From: Takakia lepidozioides
Lineage: Eukaryota; Plantae; Bryophyta
Direction: 5' to 3'
Length of the DNA: 64,000 nt
NCBI GenBank assembly: GCA_030704615.1
Contig: CM060731.1
Span: 38,378,001-38,442,000 of the forward strand
Shown here: in pieces, positions 29,301-59,517 of the stretch
Position numbering within the stretch: position 1 is the stretch's first letter
Layout: the number at the start of each line of letters is the position of its first letter
Translations under genes and position numbers: made by a program
Notes under the pieces: model-generated
What the model was told of the DNA's origin: nothing
The model's input: only the letters and a program-made list of their open reading frames with translations
The model's database searches: none

Positions 29301-29368
29301 TCTTCCCCACGAACGGGAGATGAGGATTCGTGCAACGATCGAGTATCCGGTGCTGTTGTGTACTCCAT
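26359..29368 (-). CDS. Large Ser/Pro-rich plant protein with DUF688-type motifs; exons 29368-26732 and 26529-26359
   Basis: 923-codon open frame containing AAAISFGWEDVHGKPK and PAAVPFKWEESPGKP...LQLPPRL. A GTAAGT donor at 26731 and an in-frame terminal exon (VSVCKTFKSVLL...) support the second exon. Confidence 0.8.
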
Positions 29369-32956: not shown

Positions 32957-35138
32957 ATGGCGTCCTCACCAAAATCTCCCAAATCCCCCAAATTTGATAT
33001 TGGCGCCCTGTTGGAGAGAATTGACGAAGCAGTGCAAAAGGCTTTGGACGACACAGACGAGATATTCATTACAAAGTACTCCGGCCATTCGCCCATTTGA
33101 ACAGGTTTTATCATGCATAATTGGGAGGGGAAGGGAGGGGCGGGTGTAAACTTATTTTGTTCAAGGAAGTCCAAAGAGAAATGAAATGAAATGCCACATT
33201 ATGAATTCTCAGAAAGAATAAATAATAGGAGGTCCACGAACACAATCAGAGGTAGGAAGAGAGAGAAGGAAAAAGGGTGAAAGAACTCCATAATCTCCAG
33301 GGTGCCCCAAAGAATGTACTCATAAGACGTTGTTTATCGTAGCCTTGTGGCCATTGACCCCAAAGAGAGAGAAGATTTTCAAGCAATACATGAAACCATT
33401 GGATTCTTCTACCCCTTTGTGGATTCTGGTTAACAAATGCCTACATCCCTTGCGAGATAACTGTTGAACAGATTTTAGTGATCAGGCTCAAGAGTCTGTC
33501 TGAGGACAACTGAGCCATTGCTTGGAGCAAGGTCACTAAATGAAGCCTTTGTGTTAGAGAGCAGAACATTACACTATGAGAGAGAAACTTACACAAATGT
33601 TGGCTGGATTACTGCTTGATGAAGTGTGAGTGAACAGAGATCCATTCTGGAAGATGCCAGAGAATGTATCAACAAGCTCATTCAAGAGAATGAGGCGATC
33701 CAAGAGCACTTTAAGAAGCGGGAAGGGGAAGCCGTGAGCTCTCTCTCCCTTTGTGGCCCCTCTGTCTTTCGTGTTTCTTTGTTCCCCTTGTCCCAGAAGG
33801 TCTTTGAGCTTCCCATAGATGTTTATAAAGTACCACTGCATTTCATTTCATTTCTGCATTTCACTTCATTTTACAATGAAGTTAGGCAGAAAACTTCCCT
33901 GAACTTTTTTCCAGCCTGTGACATGGGGAAGGCCATCATGGATGACCTCAAGCGTTTACCCACTCTCGGCACTAGACTGAAATTTAAACTCAGGGCAGGA
34001 AGCCTACCTTTGAACAGCAAACAGATGCAGAGAGGAAAGGGGGATTGCAAATGCCCGTTATGCGGGCAACCTGAAGACAACATTCATTTTCTGATTCATT
34101 GTCCTGGGCACTCTCCCCAGAGAGATGCCCTCTTCAAATCCATCAAGAAATTTGTGCCTGGACCTCTGTTGACCAACTTTGAAAATCTCGAGGCTGAGCC
34201 AAAAGCCCAGGCCCTTTTGGGGCCTAGTTATTGGGCATATCAGACTTAGCAGATTGATGCTTGTGTACAGGGATTTCTAGAGGATATCTGGAAAACTCGG
34301 TCAATTTTCTTTTCCCAGGTAAGTCATACTACTGGCGTCAGCCCCTGACAAAGGTAGTTTCTGTCGTGTTCCGCTCAAAGTGGGTGCGGGTTCAATGGCC
34401 ACGAGGCTACGGCAAACAGTCTTATGAGTACATTCTCTCTCTAAACATCCAAATTGGGTGCAGGGTCTAGGCTGCATCAAACAAAGTCCTATGAGTACAT
34501 TCTCTCTGTAAAGTACCATTGCATTTCATTTCTCTGTGTAGTGGTACTGGTCTGACAGTTGGGGGATATTTTCTTTTGCTCTGTCTCTGTGGTGTGTTCA
34601 TGGGCCATGTGAGCCCCCTGTGGACAGTAAAATTTCTTTTGTACTGTCACTTTGCTGTTGTCTCACCACAGTGGTGTGGCCAATTTGGGGATTAAGCAGC
34701 TCACCTTGTCTTTCTGAGTGTCATGTCCACTAGCCCATAATACGAACAGTCAATCCCCTTAAAGTGGATTGTTGTAGGCTGCTCTGGTGATTCTGGGGTG
34801 AGTATGAATGTGTGCTTACTCTCTTCTTTCCGCGGACGTTATAACGTACCATTTCATTTCATTTCATTCCATTCCTCTCCTCTCTTTTTCAAACATGCCT
34901 CACAACAACCAAAGGCTGATATGAACTAAGAAATTACCCATTCAGTTTTCATCAATTGAATTGTTGGATTATGTCAACTACTTTCCATGTGCATCAAGTT
35001 GTACTATTGAGAGGGAGTAACTAATCAGAGCATATGCATTGGGGCAGTTTGCACTGCAAGAGGTGCAAACAGAGGACATATTCCAGAAAAAGGAGCGCAT
35101 TGAGGATCTGGAGGCTGATGTCGTGCAGGTCTGCAAAT

Positions 35139-38200: not shown

Positions 38201-39478
38201 ATTGCAACTAAAGTATAAATACCCCTGGTGACTGGATCAATCCTGGGATTACACATGTTGAGCATGACAGATGACTGTGATTCTTTCCACCTGATACTTA
38301 GAAGTACTGCGAGTAAGATATTTATGTTGCAATGTATCTTAAACAAAGTCTTCGTGAATCATTTGACGAGAACAATTTCCATGTTGTGATGATCTCCACA
38401 CTCATGTTAAATAGAGGCTCCATTTTAGAACTTACATGATGACCACCAGAAAAAAACAGACAATTCGTGCAAATGAGCAGGTCCACAATTTGGAGAATAG
38501 TTTGAGGCAAGTAATACGGCAATACAGTGAAGAGAGACGTCTTCTCCAAGAGAAGCACAACTATGTGGTTGCTGAGCTCCGGTCTGAGCAACAGGTTAGC
38601 TCAATCAGCATTTCTGGGCTGTCAACTAAACCTTTCATGTCCATAGGGGGAGTGGACTTTCTCAGAGGATGTTGTTGTAGTTTTGTTTCCGCACAGCAAT
38701 ACTTTTAATGCTCCTAAGGAGATTCAAATAAGTGAGTGTAATGGAGGCGAGGGAAAGATTGTTGATCTTTTGCGGTGCATCAGCCTGTTCCTCAACGACA
38801 GGTAACTGACAAGAGTCAAAGGGAAACCAAAACACTTCCATTTGCACGCAGAAACTGAAGAGCATGGTATTGCAAAAAGCACGAGAGCTTAAGAAGTTCA
38901 GGCATCTGGCGCAGCACGTTCTCCGCCAACGTGGTGAAGTTGAGCTCTTCCTCATCGACTCTATCCAATTTGTGAAGAACCAGGTTCAACATCAGATGCC
39001 GAGATCCCAGACGCAGGCCTCCAACATGACTGAGGAAGGGGATCAAAGAGGCAATGCAAACCACAAGTCGGGAGACCACTCTGCAACACACCGTTTGACT
39101 GCAATTCGTCCATCCGAATCCTGGCCTGGGTCGGGCCCATACACCAAGCTGCCACCCAAGTCTATGACCAGATCTCCGGAGGGCGAACCAACTGATGCTG
39201 CAAAAGGCAGAAGAAAGGAGGAGTTTCTGGAGTACCTTAGCAAGGTTGACGAGGACAATCAGATGGACAATCTGGATGACTTGGGAGAAACAGTACTACT
39301 CCCTGAGAGGATCTTGCCCAAGATCGACATCTCAGAGCTTTCTTGGCCAGACAGGGAGAAGGTCTTGAGGTACTTGTTCAAGAAAATCAATACTGCTCAC
39401 CAGGCTGGTGGGGACACGCGAAGATCAACCCAGTTCGCAAGCGGCTATACAAGTGCCGCTGGCAGAACTATTGTATAG
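32957..39478 (+). CDS. BBOF1: Basal body orientation factor 1 (CCDC176/DUF4515 coiled-coil); exons about 32957-33075, about 33640-33733, 35048-35128, 35743-35907, 36781-36885, 37250-37360, 37905-38093, 38481-38594, 38852-39478
   Basis: Coiled-coil exons in consistent phase. Diagnostic segments KARELKKFRHLAQHVLRQRGEVELFLIDSIQFVK and KIDISELSWPDREKVLRYLFKKIN. The first two exons are less certain. Confidence 0.82.
33750..34530 (+). mobile_element. Composite LINE 3' ends in a BBOF1 intron: a family A tail followed by a family B fragment
   Basis: Family A tail (...GAGCTT...CATTTCATTT) at about 33780-33870. Then RLKFKLRAGSLPLN...CKCPLCGQPEDNIHFLIHCP, ending GGCTACGGCAAACAGTCTTATGAGTACATTCTCTCT. 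Confidence 0.75.
35142..35195. repeat. (TC)n microsatellite; others at about 4653-4692, 15928-15966 and 59519-59559
   Basis: Read directly from the sequence. Confidence 0.95.
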
Positions 39479-39939
39479 AATTTCTCCATAACAACACAAC
39501 ACGTCCTTCACAACTTACCTCATGAGGCTGCATGAATGTGTTGGAGAGACAGAAGCAATAAGTAAACTAAACACTCCTCCTCACATTTCCATCAAAGGAA
39601 AGAAGAAAACGCTTGCCATTGCCCACCAACATGAAACCCACGGAGCTTATGATATCAACAATAAACATGGACACAAATGTGAAGAGACAGGCTAACCCCA
39701 TTCTTCCTCTACTGCCCACATGTTGGTAGGCATGAACTTGTGTCCCTAGCTGTCTAAAGTCAGAACCCACATGCACCCATTATGCATTCTCCTTTTTAAT
39801 CTTCCAAGCACTTGGTAGCAATCATTCCTCATCACTTTTGAAAAGAAAAGAATGGAAAGGAAAGGGTGTTCATCATCTACTTTTGCAATCTATGAAATGA
39901 GGCTTTTAAGTTCATCACTTATATCTCACCATCAACAAC

Positions 39940-42320
39940 GGAAGATAATAGGAATAATGTAAGAACTTAATGCAAGCGCGTCAGGACGGTCCAGCCCTAA
40001 CACCCGTACCGCCGGTTCTTCGCATCCGGCAGACATCGAAAGGCAGCCGGCTGGGCTCGGTCAATCCCTCCCCACCCCCGCCCTCATCCCATTGGCGTCG
40101 TCGTTCTGCGACACCAGTCCGCCCGCTTCCAGCAGTCCGCCAATTCCCTGTAACCCCTGCCCCGGATTCAACCATCACCCCCATGTAACCCTCTGTAATT
40201 CCGCCGAGTGTAACCATATAACCCCATGACCCTCTATAACCCTCACCACCATGTAACCCTCTGTAACCCATGTAACCCTCTATAACACCGCAGAGTGTCA
40301 CCCCCACCCCTATGTAACCCTCACTCCATGTAACCCTATGTAACCCTTTGTAACCCATGTAATCCTCTGTGACCCTCTGTAACCCATGTAACCCTCTGTG
40401 ACCCTTTGTAACCCTCACCACCATGTAACCCTCTGTAACACCGCAGAGTGTCACCCTCGCCCGTTTGTAACCCTCACTCCATGTAACCCTCTCTGACCCT
40501 CTGTAACCCTCTGTAACACCGCAGAGTGTCACCCTTGCCACCATGTAACCCTCCGTAACCCTCACAAACCCTCTGTAACACCGCAGAGTGTCACCCTCAT
40601 CCCATGTAACCCTCACTCCATGTAACCCTCACAAACCCTCTGTGGCTCTGTAACCCATGTAACCCTCTGTAACCCATGTAACCCTCTGTGACCCTTTGTA
40701 ACCCTCACCACCATGTAACCCTCTGTAACACCGCAGAGTGTCACCCTCACCTCTATGTAACCCTCTCTGACCCTCTGTAACCCGCACCACCATGTAACCC
40801 TCTGTAACCCATGTAACCCTTTGTGACCCTCTATATCCCTCACCGGGTGTAACCCTTACCACCATGTAACCCTCTGTAACACCGCAGAGTGTCACCCTCG
40901 CCACCATGTAACCCTCCATAACCCTCACAAACCCTCTGTGACACCGCAGAGTGTCACCCTCATCCCCATGTAACCCTCACAAACCCTCTGTGGCTCTGTA
41001 ACCCATGTAACCCATGTAACCCTCTGTAACACCGCGGAGTATCACCCTCATCCCTTATGTAACCCTCACTCCATGTAACCCTCTGTAACCCATGTAACCC
41101 TCTTCGACCCTCTATATCCCTCACCAGGTGTAACCCTTACCACCATGTAACCCTCTTTAACACCGCAGAGTGTCACCCTCGCCACCATGTAACCCTCCGT
41201 AACCCTCACAAACCCTCTGTGACACCGCAGAGTGTCACCCTCATCCCCATGTAACCCTCACAAACCCTCTGTGGCTCTGTAACCTATGTAACCCTCTGTA
41301 ACACCGCGGAGTGTCACCCTCACCCCTTATGTAACCCTCTGTAACCCATGTAACCCTCTGTGACCCTTTGTAACCCTCTGTAACACCGCAGAGTGTCACC
41401 CTCACCCCTATGTACCCCTCATTCCATGTAACCCTCTCTGACCCTCTGTAACCCTCACCACCATGTAACTCTCTGTAACCCATGTAACCCTCTGTGACCC
41501 TCTATATCCCTCACCAGGTGTAACCCTTACCACCATGTAACCCTCTGTAACACCGCAGAGTGTCACCCTCGCCACCATGTAACCCTCACTCCATGTAACC
41601 CTCACAAACCCTCTGTGGCTCTGTAACCCATGTAACCCTCTGTAACACTGTAGAGTGTCGCCCTCACCCCTTATGTAACCCTCACTCCATGTAACCCTCT
41701 GTAACCCATGTAACCCTCTGTGACCCTTTGTAACCCTCACCACCATGTAACCCTCTGTAACACCGCAGAGTGTAACCCTCACCCCTATGTACCCCTCATT
41801 CCATGTAACCCTCTCTGACCCTCTGTAACCCTCACCACCATGTAACCCTCTGTAACCCATGTAACCCTCTGTGACCCTCTATATCCCTCACCAGGTGTAA
41901 CCCTTACCACCATGTAACCCTCTGTAACACCACAGAGTGTCACCCTCGCCACCATGTAACCCTCACTCCATGTAACCCTCACAAACCCTCTGTGGCTCTG
42001 TAACCCATGTAACCCTCTGTAACATTGCAGAGTGTCGCCCTTACCCCTTATGTAACCCTCTGTAACCCATGTAACCCTCTGTGACCCTTTGTAACCCTCA
42101 CCACCATGTAACCCTCACTCCATGTAACCCTCTCTGACCCTCTGTAACCCTCACCACCATGTAACCCGCTGTAACCCATGTAACCCTCTGTAACACCGCA
42201 GAGTGTCACCGTCACCCCTATGTAACCCTCACTCCATGTAACCCTCTCTGACCCTCTGTAACCCTCACCACCATGTAACCCGCTGTAACCCATGTAACCC
42301 TCTGTAACACCGCAGAGTGT
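39940..42320. repeat. Left TIR: about 210-bp unique end plus about 2.2-kb modular TGTAACCC array
   Basis: Repeated modules ATGTAACCC, TCTGTAACCC, TCACCACC and ACCGCAGAGTGTCACCC. Reverse complement of the right-end array. Confidence 0.95.
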
Positions 42321-42475
42321 ACATCATACACGTGTAAACTATCCGACAGCCGAATGGAGGTTTAAATAGAGGCCGAAACCCTAATTTGCTCTCTCCATCC
42401 GTTTTTCAGATTCCTCACTTTTTTTTTTGCTTTGGGGCATCAGCTTTCTGCAATTCCCATGGCGCCCAATCGGCT

Positions 42476-42830
42476 TCACACATCAATGCGAAAGATTTGT
42501 AGTTCATTTAGTTCAGTATCGTCATCCCAGCAACATACAAGACAACGCTTTCCGCGCAACGATCCGTCAAATCTATTACTACGGTTTTCTCTACGATTGA
42601 TACGGTTGTCTCTATTCTTTTTCTTTCTCAATGTCATTCTTGTTGTTTTGTCACCGTCCCCGATGGCTATGGTATTCCTAAGATCCGCATTAGGAAAGGG
42701 TTTTGTTTCTTTCGGTCTAGCCATGCAAGCAGCCGCTCATTTGACGGGGTGCCCATTCACTCTCCTCTCGTGTATCTTTTGTTCACACACCAGCCGGGGC
42801 AGCCTACTCATCGCTATTATGGATGCAATA
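42476..42830 (-). pseudogene. Degenerate inverted copy of the N-terminal zinc-finger-like region of the 43623 gene
   Basis: KIHERRVNGHPVK*AAACMARPKETKPFPNADLR...NRRENRSNRF aligns with KVDKSRLNRHIVDGTAACMARPKGTKPFPDAELK...NRGNRSSRF. Has an in-frame stop. Confidence 0.75.
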
Positions 42831-43622
42831 CGTATCGAATCATGCGTGTTTTGCAAGCACTGTCAACCGGTTACATGTCTGATGGTTTATATGACTACCT
42901 CACGTGTGCTATGGTTACACACAGGGGGTTACACGGTGTTTTCTTTCTCAATACATGCTGGCTTGGTAGACGGTTTAGTAATGGAGGTTTAGATGGGGTT
43001 GACATGTTTGATGGGTTACGTGGATGTTGCGCTCGCGGAGCCACATAGGCTAGGGTTACATGGGTGGGGCATTACATTGACCATGTTTACCTGGAGGTTG
43101 CATACTAATGGTTTGATATGACAGGGTTACATCGATGTTGTGTTCGGGAGTCACATAGACTAGGGGTACATGAGGTTGTGACGAAGGGTTACATCATATG
43201 TGGGTACCTGACGGAGGGTTACACTCGACGTGCCTGGCATGCGGGTAACGGCCGGTTTGTCGCGCTCACAAGTGTAGGGTTACGGGTTACACTCCGCTAT
43301 TCCGGGTGACACCGGGATTGCAACTCATACACGTGTGAGTCAGTGCGGATATAATTGATTGCAAGCCGCCAGATTTTAATGAACCGCCGTCTTTCGCTTA
43401 ACCGACGTGCCTTACGGGTGACATCTAGCTAGCTTCGTTCTTCGTTCTTTGATCATTGTTCAGTTTTCCCCTTCTCGCAGCCTTTCCTATTCTTCCTGCA
43501 CTCCTTGTTGTGCGTGCTCCCTGTTGTGCGTTCTTCGGAATTCTCTTGGTCTTGGTCTTTTCTTGTCTTGTCTTTTCTTGCTCTTGCTCTTCTCTTCTCT
43601 TCTGTCAGCTTTTTCTTTTGTC

Positions 43623-46600
43623 ATGGCTGATTGTTATTTGTTCCCTGGAGAGGCTACTATTCCATTTGATCACTTGAAAAGGGATGGCGAACGAGTTCGC
43701 TTCTGGTACACTGAGCATGAGCATGCTACAATGATCGCGTACTGCCACACCAGGTGTAGAGAGGCCAAGGTGGAGGGAGCAAAGGGCCGGCCTAAGTTCA
43801 AATGTCCTTATTGTGGGGCAGTAAAGGTAGATAAGAGCAGATTGAATCGGCATATTGTCGATGGAACGGCCGCATGTATGGCCAGACCGAAAGGAACAAA
43901 ACCGTTTCCTGATGCGGAGCTCAAGCATGCCATGGCTGTTGAAAATGTGATGAATTCTGTTCCAGCTTCTTCTGTTGATGCATATCATGCATGGATTCTG
44001 CAAAATAGGGTGGCTTTGGGTGAGATTGCAGATCCTATTGAAGTGCCTGCTGTTGTACCTTCTTCGGCTATTTCTGCTACAGAGGTTCCATCTTCTGGTG
44101 CTCCTGCTGTTTCTGTCCCTGGTCCTTCTATTCGGCAGGTTTTAACGAGAGAGACAAGCGGCGATTGAGCCCGCCTCTACCTGTCCCTATTGCAAAGAAA
44201 ATCAACATTGGAAACCGGGGAAACCGGAGCTCAAGGTTCATCTTGCGAAAGCGAACTCCAGGCTCAATCCTTCTGCTACCGCATGGCCTTATTCCTCAGT
44301 TCCCATTTCCGAATGTCAATGAGAAGGGGTTTTGGCCGGCATTCCAAGAATTTGTTGCGCGAGGCGAGGGCGCAGTCCATGCGACAGCTGCAAAATCAAG
44401 TTGGGTTCTATCGACAGACAATCAAGTTGGATTCCCTGCCATTTCTCTGTTTTTCAAATTTTGGGCTGTTGTCTATCCATGTAACCCCTTGTGTTACCCC
44501 CCCTGTCTCTCCTGTGGCGTGTAACCCAGAGTGTAACCCACCTACAGAGGACCCCTTTTAAAAACCCCTATGGTGTGTAACCCACCTCTGTGTAACCCCG
44601 TGTAGCCCATCTTGTTTGTAACCCATTTTCATGTGTAACCCCTCGTGCTGTAACCCTTTTTCTCTGGTGTAACCCCTCACGCTGTATTGCGCAGGGACTC
44701 GATATCATCTTAGAAGCGATGATATGGACAGTGTTGTTGCTGCCCACAAGGCGTTTACTGCCCAGCCGGATCATGGTCCGTTAATGATAGAGGAATTGAA
44801 TCGGGTGAAGGAGTATTTAGAGAGCATTGGGCATCCTGACATGCCAAAGCAGAAAAAGAAAAAAGGTGGGAGACTTACACGAGTCCATCGAGAGAGCCAA
44901 GCCTCACATGATGATGACACGATGGACGAACTAGCTGTTGGCAATACCGACCTTGACGATGCCAGAACTTCAAATCCTCTTGTCATCACTATTACTGTAG
45001 ATGGAATCAAAGGTTTGGTTGTTCCAGATCCGTTGGAATTCACTCGTGGTTTTGCCGAAGGATTGATCAGTCAAATGGAGAATCTCACCAAACCGCACAT
45101 TGGACCGCCACCACTCCTTTTGAGAATTCTGGCCCACAACGATGTAAGAAATCATGGCAGGTCAGTTTCCCAAACGCATCCCAGGTTGGGGTTCACGACT
45201 GAACTTCTGGAAAGTGCTCTTACGGCCTCAAAGGTGAAGGACCTGGTCGATGAGTATTACGGCTTTAGTCTGATGTACTTTGCACAACCTGGTGACGGAA
45301 TTGCGACCTTGGATTCTGAGCTCGAAGACTTAAGATCGAGTTTGAGTACAGAAGAGTGGGGTGACCGGTCAATTAAGATCAACGGAGCTATACAGTTTTG
45401 CAAGGCAAGCCGTCGTCGCGCCGCCCATCACTTTGCGATCCAACAGAGAGAATCGTTTATCCAGCTTTGGTGTTGTGGCCTCTTCAGCGAATCACCAACA
45501 GAAATGGACTTCAATGCGCGTTTGGGCATCCAGTATATGAGAGACCTTGGGTCTGTAGTGCCTTGGTATCTCTGTAAGTGTTACTCCATCCACTGTCACC
45601 CCTCTCGTCGTGTAACCCCTTTGTGTGTAATCTTGTAATCATTGTAACCCTCGCTATGTGGAACCTTGTAACTCAGTGTAACCCTCGTTGTGTGTAACCC
45701 TGTAATCAGTGTAACCCTCGCTATGTGGAACCTTGTACTCAGTGTAACCCTCGCTGTGTGTAACCCTGTAATCAGTGTAACCCTCGGAGTATGTAACCCT
45801 GTAATCAGTGTACCCCTAATGGTACCCCTCGCTGTGTTACCCTAGATTTGTTACCCTCTCGTTGTGTAATCTCAGTAGTGTAACCCATGGTAGTGTAACC
45901 CATTGCAAACTACTGTCTCTAACAGGGTGGTGTAACCCACATCGTGTAATCCGAACCACTGTCTTGTCCTAGTCAGTGTAACCCTTACATAGTGTAACCC
46001 TTGCACTTTCAAAAACCTCGTTCCACGACTAAAAACCTTTGTCTTTTCCCCGATGCAGATGAGTCCGAGCTCATGACCAATCAAGTCGCCAATGCGTTCA
46101 AAAACCTTTTTGAGGCTCAACGTGAGCTTCACGAAGTTGTGTATGGGGCCCCTCCACAATGCGATACAGGGGGCGTAGGGGGCGCGCAGACGAGCGATGG
46201 GCCAATTTCCGCCCCGCAGAGCGACGATGTACATGACGAGGACATCATTCCAAGTCAATCTGCCGTTGTATCTTTGTCGCAGGTTGGTGAATTGTACTCA
46301 ACCCAGCTGCACTTAGGGGTGAACCTAGCAGACTTGACGCGGGATTTGCCCATGAATTCTGATACTGATACTGAAGATGATACATCAAGGTGGAACACCC
46401 AAGTGCGAACCTCTTTGTCCGCAGCCCCAGTCATTTCTTTTGAAGGTCTTAATCGAAGAATCGGGGACCCGCTTGACCCAGAGTCTGTGTATGACTTTGA
46501 ATCTGGAGATGCTGGGTTGAACCCTCGATGCAGCAATGTAAGTATTTGTCAGGATCATGTGGTCAACCTCTCTCAGAATGACCCAGCCTTCGTGGGTCCC

Positions 46601-48976
46601 ATTGATGCGCAGGGTGACACTGCAAGGGGAGGATGCCCTGAAACCGAGGGTTACACTGCACCTGAGGGTGACACTGTGCAGAGAGGAGCAACAGGGAAGG
46701 AGGGTTACACTGCACCTCAGGGTGACACTGCGGATACCGGTGTGGCTGACAATGCCGTGAGGGACATTGTCGTGGGTGACACACCATTGCCCTTGAACAC
46801 TGCAACTTCCGTTGAGAGTGACATTGACATGGGTTACACTGATAGGGGTGACACCCCACAGCCAACCCACATGGTAGATGTCAGTGAGTGTAACACTGCC
46901 ATGGATGACATTCCACTACCACTAGTCGTGGAAGGTGACACTCCTTTGCCACGGCCACTAGTCGCGACGGATGACGGTCTTCCGCTAGTCAACATGGTCT
47001 TGGAGGGTGCGGAGAAGGGCGACACAATCAAGGATGGCATTGAGGAGGTTGATGCAAAGAAGAGTGACATCGACATGGGTGACACGGGGAAGGGTGTCAC
47101 CGAGGAGGTTGTCAGTTGGAAGGGTGACACAAAGCAGGGTCACACTGAGAAGCGTTTCACTGTGGAGAGTCACGAAGAGAAGGATGTTGCGGAGCATCTA
47201 GACACTGAGAAGAGTGACACTGCCAAGGGTGACACACATAAGATTGTTACTCAGCAGAGTGACACTGGGAAGGAACCCGATGAGAAGGGTGACACTGCGA
47301 AGAGTGACACTGATAATGCGGCCAAAGAGAAGGGTGACACTGAGAAGGTAGCCGGAGAGAAGGGTGACACTGAGATGCGTGACTCTGAGGAGGTAGCCGA
47401 AGAGAAGGGTGACACTAAGAAGAGTGACACTGAGGAGGTAGCCGAAGAGAAGGGTGACATTGAGAAGGAAGCCGAAGAGAAGGGTGACACTGAGAATCGT
47501 GACACTGAGGAGGTAGCCGAAGAGAAGGGTGACACTAAGAAGCGTGACAAGGGGTTTGAACAGAAGGGTGACACTGACAGGGGTAGCACCGAGGAGGTGA
47601 GCTGTGACACTTCTGCCCTTGGTCAATCACCTCCCCAGCACGTCTCAGACGAGGGAGTGCAGTCTTCAGCACTTGCAGCAAACTCAGAACAAGGCACCTC
47701 TGGCTCAAAAATTCCCCCTACCGGCGGCATTGTCAGGGTTGCAGAGAATCCCAGGAGGTCAAAACGGCCGCCTGCTCAAAGAAAGCGGTTGGCTGAACCC
47801 CCTAGCGCTGACAAAGAAGTATCTGTTCTTGTCGCACCCAAAAAACAGCGAACCAAACCGAAAGGCAAAAGTGCAGGGGTCTCGGAGGTTGACGTTGTCC
47901 AGCAGCAAGAGGTCCTTGCCAAGCACTTGCGGGAGCGTTCGAGGTACCTCATTGTACTTTGACAAAGTTCAGAATGTGTCGGACCCTCCTGGGGCGCCCG
48001 AAGTGAAGTTTTATTATGGCGATGCCTTCCTGGCTTCTAGTCCGTTACAGTTTTACTTGGAAGAGACAGATTTTGAGCCGATGTATAAAATAAGAGCAAC
48101 TGTCACAGATGCATTGCTCTCGGGTTACAACAAACTTCTGGAGGCCAAATTGTTTAAGGCTATCGCACCTGAGTTTGTCATCTGTGCTCCTTTCCAATGG
48201 CATGTCATGCGTACCAATGGTAACGATCTGCAGACGCTATTCGGGTTGGTGCAAGAATGGTACACTCAGGATGCCCGAGGGATGGTGTTCACAAAGAATC
48301 GAGATCTTGTGGACGTGGTTGTCATCCCTATTGTCTTCGAGTAAGTAATTTCAGCGTTGACTGAGCATGTTGGGTTACACTCCTCTATTCTAGACTGAGT
48401 TGCACTAGTGACTGCTGACTAGTTGTGTAACACCGTTTAGAGTTACAGTACAAAGGGTTACACTATGGGTTACACCACAGCCGGGTTACACCACAATGGG
48501 TTTCATTGGAGATGTTTTTTTCTATTCTGACGTAACGGCTTTGTTTGTGTTGCAGTGATCACTGGAGTGTTGCTGTTTTAGAGCGCCGAGGTCGGATAGT
48601 ACATTTGGACTCCCATAAAACCATTGCCCGACCCAAACTCATTGAAGGAATTTTGCGAAATTTTGCCATAGCGTTCTTTGATTTCATGCCTGGATCTGAT
48701 GACTTCAGTTACGTCATGGAGAGGATGGAATGGTTTGAGGCCAGTGTCCCCCAGCAACGGAGCTGTTGGGAGTGCGGCTATTATGCACTTTGTTTTGTGC
48801 AATTTTACTTGGAGTGGAAGTTCAATGTGAAAACCACAGAAGATCGAACCCGTCATAGGCGGGCGTTTACTGCAAGTTGGTTCAACGAGTCAACCATGAT
48901 AGCTTCCCGTACTCATATGATTAGTTGGCTGTGTGACGAGATGGACAAAGACTTGGTCAGATGGCCAAAGAAATAA
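43623..48976 (+). CDS. TE-encoded multidomain protein: N-terminal C2H-type zinc-finger-like motif, unknown central domain, acidic KGDT repeats, C-terminal Ulp1/C48 SUMO-protease domain; exons about 43623-44019, 44139-~44400, 44695-45573, 46059-48340 (frame change near 47950), 48556-48976
   Basis: KFKCPYCGAVKVDKSRLNRHIVDG at the N-terminus. Ulp1 catalytic signature IPIVF-DDHWSVAVL...HLDS...QQRSCWECGYYAL (His, Asp, Gln, Cys). Introns 44020-44138, 45574-46058 and 48341-48555 are GT-AG and phase-consistent. The second donor and the 47950 junction are uncertain. Confidence 0.75.
47010..47610 (+). repeat. Coding minisatellite with a 15-bp unit (AAGGGTGACACTGAG) encoding KGDT/KSDT repeats
   Basis: Read directly. 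Higher 30- and 45-bp periodicity (EKGDTEKVAG, EKGDTKKSDTEEVAE). Confidence 0.9.
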
Positions 48977-50359
48977 ATAGCGTCTCTTGATGCATTTTTG
49001 CTTCTATGTGGTTTGTTCGTAACACTTCACAGTTTGGGTTTCATGCAATGGGCTTACATGGGGTTACACCTTATAAGGTTACATGAAGTGGAATCATAGA
49101 CAAGTACTTGGGTACACCTTTGGGCCCTGGGGCAATGGGCTTACACTCTGTGGGTTCACACATAAGTGATGGGTTACACCATGCCGGGTCTCACAACGTG
49201 GGGTTACATTATGGGTTACATACAATGGGCCTAGGGTTACATGGTTGGGCCTTCCTGGCTATGTCAGGGTCACGTTGCTGAAACAGTATACTTTCGTGGC
49301 ATGTAACCCCACCTCGACTATGCGCATTTGTTTTATTTTTTATTTTTTTCGCACTGAAGTGTTTGTGCACTGAAGTTCTCAGATTTATACTACATGGGGT
49401 TACATACATGAGGGCTATGTACAATGGGTTACATACGATGGGGTCACAATAGTGTGGGGGTAACATCTGGTCGGGCTACATACTTCTTGGAGTTACAACA
49501 CTCTGGGTTACACTCACTCAAGAGGGTTACACAGTTCTAAGTTACACTGTGCACAATGAAAGTGGGCAGGGTTGCCTATACAAGGGCTACGTGTCGTGGG
49601 GATACATAAGATGGGGTGATGTAGCATCGGGGTTTATAGCGTGCACCCCAAATTGTACAATGGGTTACATGCGATGGGGTGACATCAATGGGGGTTACAT
49701 GTGGTCGGGATACATACTTCTTGGGGTTACACAACAACAAGTTACACTCCGGAGGGCTACACTGGTCCATAACATAGGTTGAACGGAATGATTATCTATC
49801 TCATGGATTACACGTCCATGGGTTACACACAAATTGGGTTACACATAGAGGGGTTACACATACAGGGGCTAGTGTTGGTGACTAAAGGTGCTCGACTTCA
49901 GCATCTTCCCACTCTGTATTGAAGGGTCATGTAACCCCGGCAGACTAACCCAGACCCTGTAGTCACATTGTAGTCATCGACTTATAATTCTCAGAGTTAC
50001 ACCACTGACAGCAATATTCTATGGGGTTACATACTGGGTTACACTGTTGATAGTTACATTGCAGTTACACTTGGAGTTACACCACAATGAGTTACACTGA
50101 AGAGGTTCACACTCATCTGTGTCACTGTGTGGAGTACCACAGATGCGAGTTACACTAAGTAGAGCTATGTTACGTTATGAAACCCCAGACAGTGTAACCC
50201 TGCGGTGTGTCACCCCGGCCCATGGGTGTCCCATTGAGTGGGTTACATAGGTTGAATGTGGATGGAATGGCAAAGTGAATAACAACCCATGAACAGACAT
50301 GTACTTCATATTAAACTTGGTGATCACAAAATAAGTGTCATTGCCAATGGACTCAATGG

Positions 50360-53300
50360 TCACTTACTACGGAACCGGTCTACAAAATCTACTTTCCTGG
50401 CAAGGGACATGTTGTTTCCATCATCATTTTTTATGAATGGAACTGCTTGAAGAGGGTGCAACAGACCTTTGTCGATTCTAACTTGTAAAGTGGACAGCCT
50501 CCCACGAACACAACGAAGCTCGGCAAGCAAATGTTTGCGCATTGTTTCACTCTCATTGCCAAGAAGCGACAGGGACTTCATCTCAGATTCAATTGATGAA
50601 ACATCCGATGGCTCCTGCCGACCACGCTGGGATGATGCTGAGCACTCCGTAGGCTCTGCTAGATTCACAACTTCCTCCTCTGCATCAATATCTGGAAGTT
50701 CCGATTTCATCAACATGTGAAGACCTCCATGAATGGTCCCGAGCTTTGTGCCACAGAGCTTCACAATAAGCCCTTCCTTCAGATTTGGCTTCATCAATTG
50801 AAGAACGCGGATTTGATGTTTGCACAAGTTACCCTTCAAAGCCCATGGACAATCGCAACAAGCCCAGGTGGTCGCAGGTGCATAGATTGTGTAGCTTCGA
50901 CCGGCCGTTTGAACACTATCCACAATCGCCGGATGACCAGGAACAGTGGGCAAATGAACATTGACATCAGGGATCTCCCTTGCAGTCCAAACAACATTAC
51001 TGATAAATTCCTCCTGTCGTACATTCCTTTTGAAGCCTTTCGATTTCAAGTTATCTCTATACCAATAGTGGGTTAGAACAGGACCCACGAGTTCGCTGAT
51101 CAGCCAATCGATTCTCCTGCCATCAAGCCTTTGCTTTCCCGAGCGTAAACGAGCCTTCAAATTTCCGTGCCAAGATTCAATTGCGGCATTAGTATCCTGA
51201 CTTGCGTGGGGAATATAACGAGCCCCCGTGATCCACATGCTCAGTTTTGGGACCCATTCCATTCTGATGTAATGTAGGAAGTCACGCGCAAGCGGATAGG
51301 AATAATTCAAATCTTCCAGTCGCTCCAGCGCCCACTCTTCTGGGGTGACTCCCACACAGGCGTTAATGCCGTACATTACGTCGCCAAGCTGTTTCAAAAC
51401 AGCATTGCGAGTGTATGGATCGGGCATCTTACGCCACGAATGTTTCAGCCAAGCGCGGCGAACATGCCAAAGGCATAGAAATATCGCTACGTCCCCAAAC
51501 GATTCCCTGCACGCACACACATCAAATGCCACCCAATCCATCAGTGTAACTCTTGTCAGTGTAACTCTTATCAGAGGAACTCTTCGCAGTGTAACTCGTA
51601 GAAGTGTAACTCTTCAAAGTGTCACTCTTAGTAGTGTGACTCATGTAACCCCTCGTGCATCTGGTCATGTAACTATCAGTGAAACTCACAGCAGTGTAAC
51701 CCAACACATATAACCCCTCGCAGCGCTGTAACGCAATCCATGTTACACCGTGTAACTCTCAGAGCGACCCAACCCATACAACCCTCTGCGATGCTCCCAG
51801 TGTAACTCACAGGCTATAGCAGTGCAACCTAATCCATGGAGGACTGCGGATGACACGCCGTGTAACTCCTAGTGTAACTCGCAGTGTAACCCTCTGTCTA
51901 CCTCATAGCAGTGTAACCCTCGGTCTAACTCACAGCAGTGTAACCCTCCGTCCAACTCAAGGCAGTATAACCATCTGTCTAACTGATAGTGTAACCCTCA
52001 GTGTAACAGACAGCACTGCAACCCAATCCATGTAACCCCTCAAGCAACTGACAGTGTAACTCCAAGTGTTACAGGCAGCAATGCACCCCCTCGTGTAACT
52101 GGCAGTTTAACTCTTACTGTGATTCTCAGTGTAACTAGCAGCAGTGTAGCCCGATCCATGAAACCCCTCGTGCATGCAACTTGTAGTGTGAATTACTGTG
52201 TGACTCAGAACATTGTAACTTCTAGCCGTGTACCTGATAGCATTGATTTCTGCGTCTGCATCGTCGACAACAAAAGCATTTGGCCTCCAATCTGGTTTGC
52301 TCTGAAGAAGTCGGTCGCGAAGACGTTTCATCCAGGGGCTCAAGTCAGTCGTTTTGTTTCTCGCTGATATAATATAAGCAACAGGTATGCCGTTGAGCCA
52401 TTCGTCGAACACCATCATGGTATACATTGGGAACTGCAATGTCGCAATGGTACAAAAATGAATAAGGTGAGTGTTATAATATTGGCAACAGTTGCATGGC
52501 ACTCACATTTCAGAATGCAATGAAAGGTAAAGCGTGACACGAATACCTTATTTTTGTTGGTCCCAAATGTTGCATCGCAGGATACCACACGGTTGTGTCC
52601 CAGGTCGATCATTCTGTTTTTGCCACTCCGTTTGTATTCCAATTACGAACTTCAAATCACCCGCCACTGGCGCTGTCTCTTCATGGTAGAAGAAGACGCT
52701 TTCAAGATTGCTATCGACCCACATACGTACACTTTGTGCATCATCTGGATGTTTTTTGTAACTCTCAATCGCAAGCTTGTCGGCAATGTTTCTCACGTCG
52801 TACTCGAACAAGAAACAATCGCGACTCCACTCCATGCCTGGCTGAGATGCACAAGCTTCCTGGAGCTGTTGAGTGTGTTGTGTCATAATCATAGCTGGAG
52901 ATAGGCCACTGCGAAGACTATCGACGACCACTGTTTTATATCTTGGCTGAGACGAGGGGCATGCACGAATCGCGAGAAATGGGAAGAGGGGTCAGCTGAA
53001 CCATGACATGGCTTTCCTTTTGCATCCACATGCTGTTTCTGGAAGTATGTGATGATTGCCAACTCTGAATCTAGAAAACACTGGCCAACTTTGAAGCTAC
53101 ACGTACACCCACGTTTGTATGACTCTCCGAAATCCGCTGTCTTACGTCTGATTCGCTTGACTGGTTTTTGATTATCGGAGGTTGCTATCGGTTTTTCTTT
53201 CTTCTTCACAATCGGCGGGTCCGTGCGCCTATCTATCGGGCCGTAGCAGCAGTGGTACCTGCAAAAAAAGCATATAAAGCGAGGAGGTTATCGCCATATA

Positions 53301-53740
53301 CGACTTTGCTAGGCCAGCAGAAAGAAGTGGGGTGGGAATGTTATACAACCCTCATAAGTGACTTACTTATGCCACTGACGATAACTGTTTGCACGCGGTG
53401 TTGTCAAATCTGGCAACTCACGGTACCTTCGATCTTGAACATAAAATTGGGTCTTCCCATCCACTCTACTCCTTTCTCCCTCCAGAAAACCAGGAATGCG
53501 AGACCATGGAACGACAGCTACTTCGATGGATATCCGTTTCCCTTTTCCCTGGGAAACCTGGCGTATCCAACGGAGGTTTGTGTGATTGAAAAGCCCGTCT
53601 ATGGGCAGCTGTAGGATGCATTTCAAATGAGATACCAAATGCTGCAAATGACAGAGTTCTCCCGCCTCATCTTTCAAACCATTTGATTCCAATGCTGCTT
53701 TGCGTTCCTCGTCTAGCACCTTCGCGGAAGCACATGCCAT
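50360..53740 (-). pseudogene. MULE DDE transposase with SWIM zinc finger, two frameshifts (about 52930 and 52615); exons 53740-53367, 53258-52547, 52433-52234, 51506-50360
   Basis: YHCCYGP...KRGCTCSF...H...CHG...HAP N-terminal region; VIGIQTEWQ; catalytic D1 (SCDATFGTN), D2 (FVVDDADAE), CxxH (CLWHVRRAW) and E (TNAAIESWH); SWIM motif CDCPWALKGNLCKH. GT-AG introns are phase-consistent. Confidence 0.9.
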
Positions 53741-54239
53741 TAGCAGCAACAGTACCACCAGTACAGTACAAATCGCATAACACACGCGGGCAACGCAGCG
53801 GAGCCCTCGGGACTGCACGTCGTCTACGCACCTGGTGAAAAATGACGAGCGATGATGGAGTTACACGTGGGTTTTGATGTCACCGAATCGTGTAACCCAG
53901 GTTTGAATTCAAAATATCTGACACCTCTTGGAGCCCGCCAATTTTTGCCGGGCACCAAGGGGCTACACGAACAAGGGTGACATGCGTTGGGGATAAAGGA
54001 TCCGGGGTGACACGAGCTATAAGTGACACAATCGGGGGATACACGGAGGGGATTGATATAGTATCGGGGTTACATGGTGGGGTTACAATGTGAGAGTTAC
54101 ACAATGAGGGTTACACGAGGCGGAGCTAAAGGGCTAACGTGTAGAGGGTTACAGGGATGATGGGGTTACAAGGAACTGGAGTTACACGGAGAGGGGTATA
54201 TGGGATAACATGATACAAGCTTACATTGGGGTTACACGA

Positions 54240-57200
54240 TGCAGGATAAATGGAGTGAGGGTTACACCCCGCGGAGTAACAGAGGGTTACATGGGTTACA
54301 AAGGGTTACAGAGGGTCATGGGATTACATGGGTTACAGAGGGTGACATAGGGTTACATGGGAGGGTTACATGGAGTGAGGGTGACACTCAGTGGTGTTAC
54401 AGAGGGATAAACGGGTTACGGAGGGTTACATGGTGGTGAGGGTTACACCTGGTGAGGATTACAGAGGGTCACAGAGGGTCACAGAGGGTCACAGAGGGTT
54501 ACATGGAGTGAGGTTACACAGGGGTGAGGGTGACACTCTACGGTGTTATTGAGGGTTACTGAGGGTTACATGGTGGTGAAGGTTACACCTGGTGAGGGTT
54601 ATAGAGGGGAGGGTTACATGGGTTACAGAGGGTCAGAGAGGGTAACATGGAGTGAGGGTTACATGGGTTACACAGGGTCACAGAGGGTTACATAGGGTCA
54701 CAGAGGATTACATGGGTTACAAGGAGTGAGGGATTCATAGGGATGGGGGTGACACTCTGCGGTGTTACAGAGGGTTACATGGTGGTAAGGGTTACACCTA
54801 GTGAGGGATATAGAGGGTCACAGAGGGTTACATGGATTACAGAGGGTTATAGAGGGTCAGAGAGGGTTACATAGAGTGAGGATTACATAGGGGTGAGGGT
54901 GACATTCTGCGGTGTTACAGAGGGTTACATGGTGGTGAGGGTTACAAAGGGTCACACAGGGTTACATGGGTTACAGAGGGTTACATGGAGTGAGGGTTAC
55001 ATAAGGGGTGAGGATGACACTCCGCGGTGTTACTGAGGGTTACATAAGGGGTACAGAGCCACACTGAGGGTTACATGGGGATGAGGGTGACACTCTGCGG
55101 TGTCACAGAGGGTTTGTGAGGGTTACGGAGAGTTACATGGTGGCGAGGGTGACACTCTGCGGTGTTACGGAGGGTTACATGGTGGTAAGGGTTACACCTG
55201 GTGAGGGATATAGAGGGTCACAGAGGGTTACATGGATTACAGAGGGTTACATGGTGATGAGGGTTACAGAGGGTCAGAGAGGGTTACATGGAATGAGGGT
55301 TACATAGGGGTGAGGGTGACACTCTGCGGTGTTACAGAGGGTTACATGGTGGTGCGGGTTACAAAGGGTCACAGAGGGTTACATGGGTTACAGAGGGTTA
55401 CATAAGGGGTGAGGGTGACACTCCGCGGTGTTACAGAGGGTTATATGGGTTACAGAGCCACAGAGGGTTTGTGAGGGTTACGGAGGGTTACATGGTGGCG
55501 AGGGTGACACTCTGCGGTGTTACAGAGGGTTACATGGTGGTAAGGGTTACACCTGGTGAGGGATATAGAGGGTCACAGAGGGTTACATGGTGGTGAGGGT
55601 TACAGAGGGTCAGAGAGGGTTACATGGAATGAGGGTTACATAGGGGTGAGGGTGACACTCTGCGGTGTTACAAAGGGTTACATGGTGGTGAGGGTTACAA
55701 AGGGTCACAGAGGGTTACATGGGTTACTGAGGGTTACATGGAGTGAGGGTTACATAAGGGGTGAGGGTGACACTCCGCGGTGTTATAGAGGGTTACATGG
55801 GTTACAGAGCCACGGAGGGTTTGTGAGGGTTACATGGGGATGAGAGTGACACTCTACGGTGTCACAGAGGGTTTGTGAGGGTTACGGGGGGTTACATGGT
55901 GGCGAGGGTGACACTCTGCGGAGTTACAGAGGGTTACATGGTGGTAAGGGTTACACTTGGTGAGGGATATAGAGGGTCATAGAGGGTTTCATTGGTTACA
56001 GAGGCTTACATGGGTTACAGAGGGTTACATGGTGGTGAGGGTTACATGGGTTACAGAGGGTTACATGGAGTGAGGATTACATGGAGTGAGGGTTACATAA
56101 GGGTTGAGGGTGACACTCCGCGGTGTTACTGAGGGTTACATGGGTTACAGAGCCACACTGAGGGTTACATGGGGATGAGGGTGACACTCTGCGGTGTCAC
56201 AGAGGGTTTGTGAGGGTTACGGAGGTTTACATGGTGGCGAGGGTGACACTCTGCGGTGTTACAGAGGGTTACATGGTGGTAAGGGTTACACCTGGTGAGG
56301 GATATAGAGGGTCACAGAGGGTTACATGGGTTGCAGAGGGTTACATGGTGGTGAGGGTTACAAAGGGTCACAGAGGGTTACATGGAATGAGGGTTACATA
56401 GGGGTGAGGGTGACGCTCCGCGGTGTTACAGAGGGTTACATGGGTTACAGAGGGTTACATGGAGTGAGGGTTACATAAGGGGTGAGGGTGACACTCCGCA
56501 GTGTTATAGAGGGTTACATGGGTTACAGAGCCACAGAGGGTTTGTGAGGGTTTCATGGGGATGAGGGTGACACTCTGCGGTGTCATAGAGGGTTTGTGAG
56601 GGTTACGGAGGGTTACATGGTGGCGAGGGTGACACTCTGCGGTGTTACAGAGGGTTACATGGTGGTAAGGGTTACCTCCGGTGAGGGATATAGAGGGTCA
56701 CAGAGGGTTACATGGGTTGCAGAGGGTTACATGGTGGTGAGGGTTACAGAGGGTCAGAGAGGGTTACATAGGGGTGAGGGTGACACTTTTCGGTGTTAAA
56801 GAGGGTTACATGGTGGTGAGGGTTACAAAGGGTCACAGAGGGTTACATGGGTTACAGAGGGTTACATAAGGGGTGAGGGCGACACTCTGCGGTGTTACAG
56901 AGGGTTACATGGGTTACAGAGCCACAGAGGGTTTGTGAGGGTTACATGGAGTGAGGGTTACATGGGATGAGGGTGACACTCTGCGGTGTCACAGAGGGTT
57001 TGTGAGGGTTACGGAGGGTTACATGGTGGTGAGGGTGACACTCTGCGGTGTTAAAGAGGGTTACATGGTGGTGAGGGTTACAGAGGGTCATGGGGTTATA
57101 TGGGTTACAGAGGGTGACATGGTGGTGTGGGTTACACTCGGCGGAGTTACAGAGGGTTACATGGGGGGTGATGGTTGAACCCGGGGCGGGGGTTACAGGA

Positions 57201-57397
57201 ACTGGCGGACTGGTGTCGCAGAATGACGACGCAGGGGCCGATGACGCGCCTGGGCGACGACGCCGATGGGATGAGGGCGGGGGTGGGGAGGGATTGACCG
57301 AGCCCAGCCGGCTGCCTTTCGATGTACCGGCGGTACGGGTGTCAGGGCTGGACTGACGCGCTTGCATTAAGTTCTTACATTATTCCTATTATCTTCC
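54240..57397. repeat. Right TIR: about 3-kb modular GGGTTACA array plus unique end
   Basis: Modules AGGGTTACAT, GAGGGTTACAG, GGTGGTGA and GGGTGACACTCTGCGGTGTTAC. Degenerates gradually inward toward about 53860. Confidence 0.95.
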
Positions 57398-58871
57398 ATC
57401 AACAACAATCATCTGGGCTACATGCCACTATTCAGTTTTACAATTGCAAATCAGCAAAGTGCTCTACAAGGGGCCCAATTAAACTTGGGCATGTATGTAT
57501 GAAATCAAATCAAACAGTTGCTGGGTAAGTTACTTATTTCCAAGCGATATGCACAACCCAAAATCTAGATACTACCCACCTAATCTAGAACCTCAGCCTA
57601 CCCAAGGAAAGCATGTGGTGAAGCAGCGATCATCAGCAGAGACGTGGGGGAAGAAAGAGAGAGAGTGCATGTCAACGCCCACACATGGCAGTGGCATAAT
57701 GGGTACAGAGATTCAAGCCACAGTGTGGATCAGGATTCAGACTCCCGTGATAACACATCCACCGAGGTAGTGGGCCCCTGGGAAAGTTGATAGGCTGATC
57801 TTTTCATGTTTATCGCCACATTTATGGTTGTACCTTAGCACCCCACGGATATGCGTTGCTTGGGAGGAAATCAAATCGATTTGCTTTGTTTCCCGGGCCT
57901 GTTGTAATGTGTGGACTGTGAAAATGCACACGAGGTGGGCTTTGTACTAAGCATCCGAGGAAATTGTGCTTTCTCTAAAAGAGAAGGAGTGAAACGAAGA
58001 GGAACGAAGAGGGTGTTTCGCTAGTGAAAAGTAGCTCTCAGAAATTATCATTTGAGCAACGTGGGCGGAAGAGCACATGTAGGCCTCAGTTCAGCGACCC
58101 AGCTCAACTGCCATATCACACCAGTCAGAGTCTTACAGTGTTATATGCAGTTGCATCAGATGTGAAGTTCCATGGAAGCTGCAAAGTCACCCACACTCTC
58201 TTATCGTTTCCAAGTCAATGTGCGGGAGAAGTAGACTTTGGTGAGGGAGACGTGGCTGAGAGGCGGCAGTCAGATGGTGGTGCTACAGTAATGCGAGCAG
58301 TTAGCAAACGGTGGGCCAATGAAAGCGCTAGATTCTTGGACAGTTGCAGTGCTTGTGGGCAGATTCTTGCATCTTCTGGGTCCCCTTGTGGCGGCCGCTG
58401 CCATCGCAGGCGTTGGGTAGTGGAGGGAATTCTCAAGACGTGGTTTTGTCCCATTCCTGGACTCAAGCTGCTGCTTGATGCTTCATTTTTCTGCTCTTTG
58501 AGTCTCTGGTTCTTTTTGTCTGTCGAGCAGTATGGTCATCCCAACTGTTTCATTCATCGCAGGCTGCCGCACTCTGCGTGAGAGCTCCGGAGATGGAGCA
58601 CGTTGAGACGCTCAGGTCTTCAATCCGGACAGGAACGAGAGAGAGATCGAGATAGAGACAGAGATTGGGACGTAGACAACTTGCGATATCAATCCCAGCG
58701 ATTGAATCAAGCAAGGCTCGGCTTGCATTAACCACACCCTACGTAGGTGGGATACATGTTGACAAGGGTGTTGAGTAGAGGAGATAGAGGCAGATCAAAG
58801 GGCATTCAACCCAACTGGCCTGTACTTGCCAATAGGGAGCTTGCCTGAGACTCTGCATTGGACGAAAGAGG

Positions 58872-59517
58872 ATGCCATTCTGCGACGTAGAAGGGTATGT
58901 TGAGCAGGATGCGACTGGAAACTCCAGTCATGAGAGTGTGCGACTCTTCTATCAGCTATATGGTCATGCGGATACCAAGGTGTTGCTCATAACTGGTGCG
59001 CCCTCACACCTTCACTACATTGGCCATTTTTTTCTTGGTCCAGTAGTGCCTTGATGATTCTCCAATCAGAAGTATGTATTTGTAGATCGCGCTATCCGCA
59101 AAGAGAGATTGTTGTATCGAGAAGCCTAAGCCGAGTAATGTATGACAGGTGTGGCAGCCACTCATGATTCGTGGGGTCCCCAATTGGTCGGTCTGTGTGG
59201 CACCGATGTACCGAACGACCAAGAAGAACGGAAGACTGCAATTCCTGTCAGAGACGGTGATGGGGATCATGCAGAAGATAATATGAGCGCGTCCGGAAGG
59301 AATTCGATCGGTGATGGCAATACACAAACAGAGGAGACAGCTACTTCCGGATATGGAGTGCAGGTGTGCACCTTTGACAACCGAGGTGTTGGGCGAAGCT
59401 CCAAACCGAGACACAAACATAAATACACGTAGGAAACGTGCACCCCGACTGTTTCTAGACTATTCTGATCTCATCAGATTCGTTGCAAGCTAATTATCGC
59501 AGCTTTTGTCTGACCCT

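What the first reader, a model, noticed from the sequence alone, without database searches (positions are those of the whole stretch)
39940..57397. Intact-ended 17.5-kb MULE whose TIRs are kilobase-long repeat arrays
Seen: perfect 9-bp TSD, 45 identical terminal bases, about 200 bp of imperfect unique TIR, then about 2.2 kb (left) and 3 kb (right) of mirror-image modular repeats. These enclose two convergent genes. Known: a 9-bp TSD plus a DDE/CxxH/SWIM transposase defines Mutator elements, and repeat-extended TIRs are a Foldback trait. Inference: the combination of large size, Foldback arms, a Ulp1 passenger and a seed-free-plant host may represent an undescribed MULE family that inserted recently.
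Basis: partly seen in the sequence, partly recalled or inferred. Interest (0 to 1): 0.85.

Follow-up and report, generated by a model that had tools for sequence, protein, structure and literature searches.

The report
Moss foldback Mutator painted with motif
This is a real but broken 17.5-kb copy of a multi-copy jumping gene of a moss-like plant, whose ends have grown into kilobases of one short DNA word that also fills its introns, most likely as landing sites for the element's own proteins, a mix of features known separately from other Mutator transposons.

Summary
Confirmed: a 17,458-bp Mutator-superfamily element (39940-57397) with an exact 9-bp TSD, 45 identical terminal bases, about 225 bp of unique TIR, mirror-image arrays of about 2.15 and 3.1 kb, and two convergent spliced genes: a WRKY/GCM1-DDE-SWIM transposase and a zinc-finger/Ulp1 gene. 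This copy is defective: public-run contigs of the family are in frame where it is frameshifted and hold about 95 bp that it lacks; it differs from them by about 0.4%. Depth suggests some tens of copies. Related transposons in moss-like metagenome contigs carry sister words (GTAAC, GAAAC, GATAC cores) that follow the transposase tree. Best reading: self-recognition sites for an element-encoded protein, more likely the transposase than the zinc-finger/Ulp1 protein; binding is untested. Foldback TIRs (Muta1, Tm1, FARE), Ulp1 cargo (Kaonashi) and motif painting (VANDAL) are each known; I found no paper on this lineage. The scan has already reported sister copies and the same reading elsewhere in this genome.

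The parts
39931..39939 (+). left target-site duplication, 9 bp
   Evidence: exact match to 57398-57406
39940..40165 (+). left unique TIR, about 225 bp, first 45 bp identical to right end; holds only one GTAAC
40166..42320 (+). left subterminal array, GTAACCC-based monomers, 95 copies of the word, 52 GTAAC per kb
43623..44433 (+). accessory gene exon 1 (3' boundary uncertain): C2HC zinc finger, first Cys codon at 43803; 1-bp deletion at about 44143 relative to family contig
   Evidence: Pfam zf-Di19/C2H2 below cut-off; family contig reads through
44434..44685 (+). predicted intron filled with the word (40 per kb)
44686..45573 (+). accessory gene exon 2, about 295 aa, no recognisable domain; 1-bp deletion near 44697
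   Evidence: blank; fold unusable
45574..46058 (+). predicted intron filled with the word (37 per kb)
46059..47943 (+). accessory gene exon 3: acidic low-complexity region whose KGDT-type peptide repeats are encoded by the GTGAC variant of the word (17 copies)
   Evidence: open for 653 codons; splice phases match
47958..48340 (+). accessory gene exon 4 (N-terminal part of the protease); about 95 bp of intron plus exon start are missing at about 47960 in this copy
   Evidence: family contigs hold the extra letters (tables 7 and 8)
48556..48976 (+). accessory gene exon 5: Ulp1/C48 catalytic part, His 48560, Asp 48608, Gln 48752, Cys 48773
   Evidence: PF02902 22.9 bits, above cut-off 20.7; weak SENP8 match
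48977..50359 (.). central spacer between the convergent genes, 25 GTAAC per kb
50360..51506 (-). transposase exon 4: CxxH (51475/51466), conserved Trp (51235), catalytic Glu (51178), SWIM finger
51507..52233 (-). transposase intron 3 filled with the word (33 per kb)
52234..52433 (-). transposase exon 3 with second catalytic Asp (52265)
52547..53258 (-). transposase exon 2: Zn ligands of the WRKY/GCM1-type domain, HTH, first catalytic Asp (52576); frameshifts at about 52927 and 52611 in this copy
53367..53740 (-). transposase exon 1, first part of the DNA-binding domain
   Evidence: aligns with homologues
54051..57170 (-). right subterminal array, 119 copies of the word, 46 GTAAC per kb, ragged inner edge
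57171..57397 (-). right unique TIR
57398..57406 (+). right target-site duplication

Best explanation
A defective copy of a young, multi-copy, two-gene foldback MULE family (identity: shown, about 0.97). Active members move by Mutator cut-and-paste using the DDE transposase, leaving 9-bp TSDs (established for the superfamily). The word (T)GTAACCC is most likely the binding site of the transposase's own N-terminal WRKY/GCM1-plus-HTH module (inferred). Local tandem duplication multiplied it wherever coding constraint allowed, most extremely next to the TIRs, where more sites load more transposase on the ends; the intronic and spacer clusters extend self-recognition over the whole element, probably to keep it transcribed or less methylated, with the zinc-finger/Ulp1 protein as a helper that removes SUMO-type marks (inferred, untested). 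The confidence given is for this mechanism, not for the identity.
For: Word density 46-52 per kb in arms, 25-40 in long introns and spacer, 0-2.6 in most exons, 0.9 in flanks; 68 seen vs 1.8 expected in the interior. Arms carry it in strict mirror orientation. Homologue DNA-binding region folds like AFT2/WRKY (Z 6.5, rmsd 2.5, 73 aligned; Foldseek top hits WRKY18 but E 0.11) plus an HTH like SETMAR/Mos1; this fold is the known MULE DNA-binding domain (PMC1702500). Related elements carry one sister word each, element-bound in 11 of 12 contigs, and word class follows the transposase tree. The GTAAC core is shared with L003/L010, whose transposase exon is 42-45% identical while their second gene shows no tblastn similarity to this one outside a zinc finger. 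L079 is word-rich with no detected second gene. Precedents: more subterminal repeats give more binding and excision in Muta1 (PMC5499845); AtMu1 transposase alone demethylates and activates its family (bioRxiv 10.64898/2026.08.24.746577).
Against: No binding data. The unique TIR itself has only one copy per end, and sites 5-9 kb from the ends have no known role in synapsis. A C2HC zinc-finger gene also recurs in relatives of all three word classes. Tree clustering reflects shared ancestry of the whole element, not co-evolution. The fold was predicted for a Riccia homologue, not this protein, and the Z scores are middling. L079 is decayed and could be a deletion derivative; the transposase-only L050 lacks a word.
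Confidence: 0.45

Rival explanations
1. The zinc-finger/Ulp1 accessory protein reads the word and acts as a separately evolved VANC/KIU-like anti-silencing factor; the transposase needs only the unique TIR.
For: Same-orientation clusters in introns and spacers, amplified by tandem repeats, are the VANC-target pattern (PMC5735166, PMC10398659); Ulp1-bearing VANCs (KIU) exist (PMC13317346); finger genes occur in GTAAC, GAAAC and (weakly) GATAC relatives; protease triad intact; the accessory protein has tandem peptide repeats as VANCs do; transposase-only L050 has no word.
Against: No DUF1985 or DUF287; one finger reads only 3-4 bp; accessory proteins of elements sharing the GTAAC core are otherwise unalike; the finger match to relatives is weak (12.8 bits).
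Confidence: 0.3
2. The word has no reader: one subterminal or ancestral site was spread by slippage, unequal crossing-over and gene conversion, and tolerated in non-coding DNA.
For: Foldback arrays are dynamic; arms differ in length and share recent blocks; short introns lack the word.
Against: Seven separate clusters in both orientations with different neighbouring sequence share only the word; distant relatives keep related words in their own non-coding parts.
Confidence: 0.15
3. The arrays mimic telomeric or telo-box DNA and recruit host telomere-repeat-binding Myb proteins.
For: AGGGTTA occurs 198 times; C-rich strand left, G-rich strand right.
Against: TTTAGGG 0, tandem TTAGGG 0, telo-box 1 in the whole element; sister words in relatives lack the CCC part.
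Confidence: 0.07
4. The copy is really intact and autonomous, and the frameshifts are long-read assembly errors in unpolished repeat DNA (this concerns the state of the copy, not the mechanism).
For: Most indels are 1-2-bp deletions, several in homopolymers.
Against: A roughly 95-bp deletion with short flanking homology and 23-33 substitutions, mostly non-synonymous where coding, also separate it from the family.
Confidence: 0.2

Closest known systems
Foldback-type MULEs: Muta1 (Aedes), Tm1 (Meloidogyne), FARE (Arabidopsis), FB-type Phantom
   Same: 9-bp TSD, MULE transposase, TIRs made of a terminal unique part plus tandem subterminal repeats of unequal number at the two ends (PMC5225508, PMC5499845, PMC3169594)
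   Different: Arms here are 2.4 and 3.3 kb against 145 bp in Muta1 and 1-9 units in Tm1; element is 17.5 kb with a second gene; the word also fills introns and spacers; different transposase lineage
VANDAL/VANC and Kaonashi (KIU) MULEs of Arabidopsis
   Same: Large multi-gene MULE, Ulp1 domain, short family-specific motif in same-orientation tandem clusters in non-coding parts, motif differs between families (PMC5735166, PMC13317346)
   Different: No DUF1985/DUF287; has long TIRs whereas KIU elements are non-TIR; accessory protein starts with a C2HC finger; anti-silencing untested
Rehavkus
   Same: 9-bp TSD, long TIRs, minisatellite near an end (PMC6446971)
   Different: Animal hosts, single ORF with PHD finger; here two genes and a SWIM finger
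Seed-plant 'SWIM zinc finger family' host genes (Amborella LOC18448602, Magnolia XP_058107082, Hevea, Perilla, Cryptomeria)
   Same: Homologous over the DNA-binding, catalytic and SWIM regions; 32% identity over 231 aa to the Amborella protein
   Different: Those are annotated as host genes; here the gene sits between TIRs and a TSD in a multi-copy family. Whether they were domesticated from this lineage was not tested with a rooted tree
Related TIR elements in metagenome contigs (L003, L010, L042, L074, L079)
   Same: Homologous transposase, TIRs (8-10-bp TSD on L074), convergent finger gene in L003/L010, a painted word
   Different: 7-10.5 kb, no kilobase arrays, no Ulp1 detected, far lower word density

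Membership tests
Mutator/MULE superfamily | 8-10-bp target-site duplication | tested here: met
   exact 9 bp
Mutator/MULE superfamily | long TIRs (over 100 bp) | tested here: met
   about 225 bp unique plus arrays
Mutator/MULE superfamily | DDE triad with CxxH after the second D and a conserved W before E | tested here: met
   positions; homologues reach PF10551 cut-off; joined model not searched
Mutator/MULE superfamily | N-terminal WRKY/GCM1-type DNA-binding domain and C-terminal SWIM | tested here: met
   ligands conserved; homologue fold matches AFT2/WRKY at middling scores; SWIM 18.8 bits, just under cut-off
Mutator/MULE superfamily | other copies at other sites, empty site | tested here: inconclusive
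Autonomous element | open transposase frame | tested here: not met
   two frameshifts in exon 2 in this copy; family contigs are in frame
Foldback-type TIR architecture | TIRs with internal tandem repeats, unequal between ends | tested here: met
VANDAL/VANC/KIU | DUF1985 or DUF287 anti-silencing domain | tested here: not met
   no Pfam hit in any accessory exon at E up to 1
VANDAL/VANC/KIU | short motif clustered in non-coding tandem repeats, family-specific | tested here: met
VANDAL/VANC/KIU | absent or degenerate TIRs | tested here: not met
VANDAL/VANC/KIU | protein binds the motif and demethylates cognate copies | not testable with these tools
   needs binding and methylome assays
Ulp1/C48 protease | His-Asp-Cys triad with oxyanion Gln | tested here: met
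Rehavkus | single ORF with PHD finger, animal host | tested here: not met
   PMC6446971 Table 1
Any Repbase/Dfam family | full-length nucleotide match | not testable with these tools
   libraries not available

The most novel reading that the evidence does not exclude
Moss MULEs of this lineage run a sequence-specific self-protection system that evolved apart from VANC: each family paints its non-coding DNA with its own variant of a TGT-NN-C word, read by the transposase or the zinc-finger/Ulp1 protein, and in this family the word ran away into kilobase foldback arms and even into a coding exon.
Probability: 0.3. Interest if true: 0.75.

Novelty: new variant of a known kind. Interest (0 to 1): 0.5.

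Why it matters
It links two things usually treated apart: how simple TIRs grow into Foldback arms, and how transposons mark themselves for sequence-specific escape from silencing. A series of related families with one-base changes in the word gives a natural specificity code that a single binding experiment can test. The lineage is also the mobile kin of an uncharacterised seed-plant SWIM gene family. As a single locus it is only a dead copy.

Tried and rejected
Terminal 24-mer scans of JGI metagenomes and bacterial genomes: none. Homologue searches for accessory exons found only the family's own contig or nothing; these see only similar lengths, so blanks are weak. Single-sequence fold of exon 2 was unusable (pLDDT 41). 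A second CPYC finger-like string in another frame near 44175-44250 is not a significant DNA duplicate (15 of 300 shuffles). Telomere mimicry rejected on counts. Host could not be named from exact look-ups. My recalled link to At4g13970/At1g60560 as described domesticated genes was not confirmed in papers. Two wanted papers were not held. The tree is the quick version; the careful search did not finish.
Full report
Observation. The element spans 39940-57397 (17,458 bp). The flanks carry an exact 9-bp duplication, the ends are identical for 45 bases and similar for about 225 bp with two indels, and the terminal 20-mer occurs nowhere else in the window. Inside lie arrays of about 2.15 kb (left) and 3.1 kb (right) with opposite GC skew. 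They are built from the same small set of 9-28-bp monomers, 24 of which make up 71% of all units, arranged in higher-order repeats of about 280-390 bp. The arms mirror each other in orientation and modules but not base for base; the longest exact match between arms (108 bp) is as long as within an arm (101-103 bp), which suggests ongoing homogenisation (inference).

Genes. The minus strand holds a four-exon transposase (53740 to 50360). Splice phases are consistent. It has the DDE triad, CxxH, the conserved Trp and a SWIM finger. Exon 4 finds 716 relatives; named ones are from Riccia sorocarpa, Adiantum, Cryptomeria, Amborella, Magnolia, Hevea and Perilla, several reaching the Pfam MULE cut-off. 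A model of the N-terminal 300 residues of a Riccia homologue matches AFT2 and WRKY domains, followed by an HTH like that of mariner transposases (middling scores), the known MULE arrangement (PMC1702500). The plus strand holds a five-exon gene (43623 to 48976): C2HC zinc finger, a 295-aa domain without relatives, an acidic repeat region, and a Ulp1/C48 domain above Pfam's cut-off with an intact triad. The models are predicted; no RNA run holds the stretch. Exons were searched one by one; the joined step was left out.

State of this copy. Contigs of three public runs (two samples) cover 47850-53820 fully and carry extra letters at 52927 and 52611 that keep the transposase in frame, and about 95 bp at 47960 that supply an intron and the start of the protease exon. 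A family contig also reads through the shifts near 44143 and 44697. The window differs from these contigs at 23-33 places in 5,971 bp (about 0.4-0.55%); 10 of 14 coding differences checked are non-synonymous. So this copy is non-autonomous, while the family majority is open over the stretch laid. Some 1-bp deletions may be assembly errors. Main contigs in run X3 have depth 1,600-2,300 and rare variant contigs 50-55, and a run with only 4.5 Mb of contigs recovers the genes at depth about 60; I infer roughly 30-45 near-identical copies, with the tool's caveat that depth is not copy number. Junctions and the empty site were not tested. The host is a seed-free plant by gene content; about 5,080 windows of 64 kb and other notes of the scan point to the moss Takakia, which I did not verify.

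The word. GTAACCC occurs 284 times in the element and twice in 46.5 kb of flank. Counting the GTAAC core per kb: arms 52 and 46, four longer introns 33-40, central spacer 25, transposase exons 0-1.4, flanks 0.9; the two short introns and the unique TIRs are nearly free. Each cluster is single-stranded in orientation, but orientation differs among clusters. A GTGAC variant entered the acidic exon, where it encodes KGDT-type repeats.

Relatives. Eighty loci from JGI metagenomes and three from ENA encode related transposases on contigs that look plant-derived. Several are TIR-bounded, one with an 8-10-bp TSD. Of those with enough flank, most are enriched for exactly one sister word: GTAAC, GAAAC, GATAC or GTGAC cores, confined to the element in 11 of 12 long contigs. 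On a quick tree GAAAC elements form one side of a fully supported branch, GATAC elements group likewise, and GTAAC recurs in several lineages. This shows that painting is a lineage-wide, family-specific trait; it does not show which gene co-evolves, since kin share everything. L003 and L010 have a convergent second gene with a similar finger but no other similarity and no detected Ulp1; finger remnants also appear in GAAAC and, weakly, GATAC elements. None has kilobase arms, so the arms are this family's addition.

Mechanism. Shown: anatomy, distribution of the word, family structure. Established: MULE cut-and-paste through a DDE transposase; extra subterminal repeats increase binding and excision in Muta1 (PMC5499845); VANC proteins bind short motifs clustered in non-coding tandem repeats and demethylate their family (PMC5735166); some VANCs carry Ulp1 (PMC13317346); AtMu1 transposase alone can bind and derepress its family (bioRxiv 10.64898/2026.08.24.746577). 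Inferred: the word is a binding site for an element protein (about 0.75), the transposase (0.45) ahead of the finger/Ulp1 protein (0.30), because the word core is conserved where the transposase is and the accessory gene mostly is not, and because density peaks symmetrically beside the TIRs. Neutral spread (0.15) and telomere mimicry (0.07; no true telomeric repeats) are less likely.

Verdict. A member of the Mutator superfamily with Foldback architecture; it works like Muta1 at the ends and looks like VANDAL inside, but is not a VANDAL/KIU member (no DUF1985/DUF287, long TIRs). No paper on this lineage turned up, though Repbase/Dfam were unavailable. New variant of a known kind. The scan had already noted sister copies of 15-18 kb and reached a similar reading; those notes are not independent support, and the points above rest on my own tests.

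Noticed in passing
window 38864-39478 (+): ORF ending 462 bp before the element; from memory it resembles the C-terminus of the ciliary protein BBOF1/CCDC176, which would fit a plant with motile sperm. Pfam blank.
   Followed up: partly
window 59200-59430 (+) and 59598-61295 (+): Alpha/beta-hydrolase-like exon followed by a LINE reverse-transcriptase remnant (RVT_1, E 1e-9).
   Followed up: partly
window 46600-47600 (+): The element's word, in its GTGAC form, is reused as coding sequence for acidic peptide repeats.
   Followed up: partly
window 44175-44250 (+): A second CPYC-to-His finger-like string in a frame other than the open one, also in the family contig; could point to an unresolved splice form.
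   Followed up: partly
P0033, P0173, P0032, P0058 (database proteins): The transposase lineage is homologous end to end with conserved, uncharacterised seed-plant SWIM zinc-finger genes, candidates for domestication.
   Followed up: partly
L003 5539-8826 (-), L010 4491-8024 (-), L077, L049, L023: An unannotated family of accessory proteins (C2HC finger, proline-rich linker, about 300-aa Trp-rich domain) convergent with the transposase; no Pfam hit.
   Followed up: partly
L002 about 6836 versus L003 about 91: Same element end with different left flanks, showing several insertion sites of the relative in its host.
   Followed up: no
L050 2-5436: A 5.4-kb TIR element with open transposase frames, no second gene and no painted word.
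   Followed up: partly
window 4581-4991 and 33626-34249 (+): Two related short LINE-like 3' remnants with a CPxC-H-C finger.
   Followed up: no
window 22405-23088 (+) and 26597-29368 (-): Host F-box/kelch-like gene and a DUF688-like gene.
   Followed up: no
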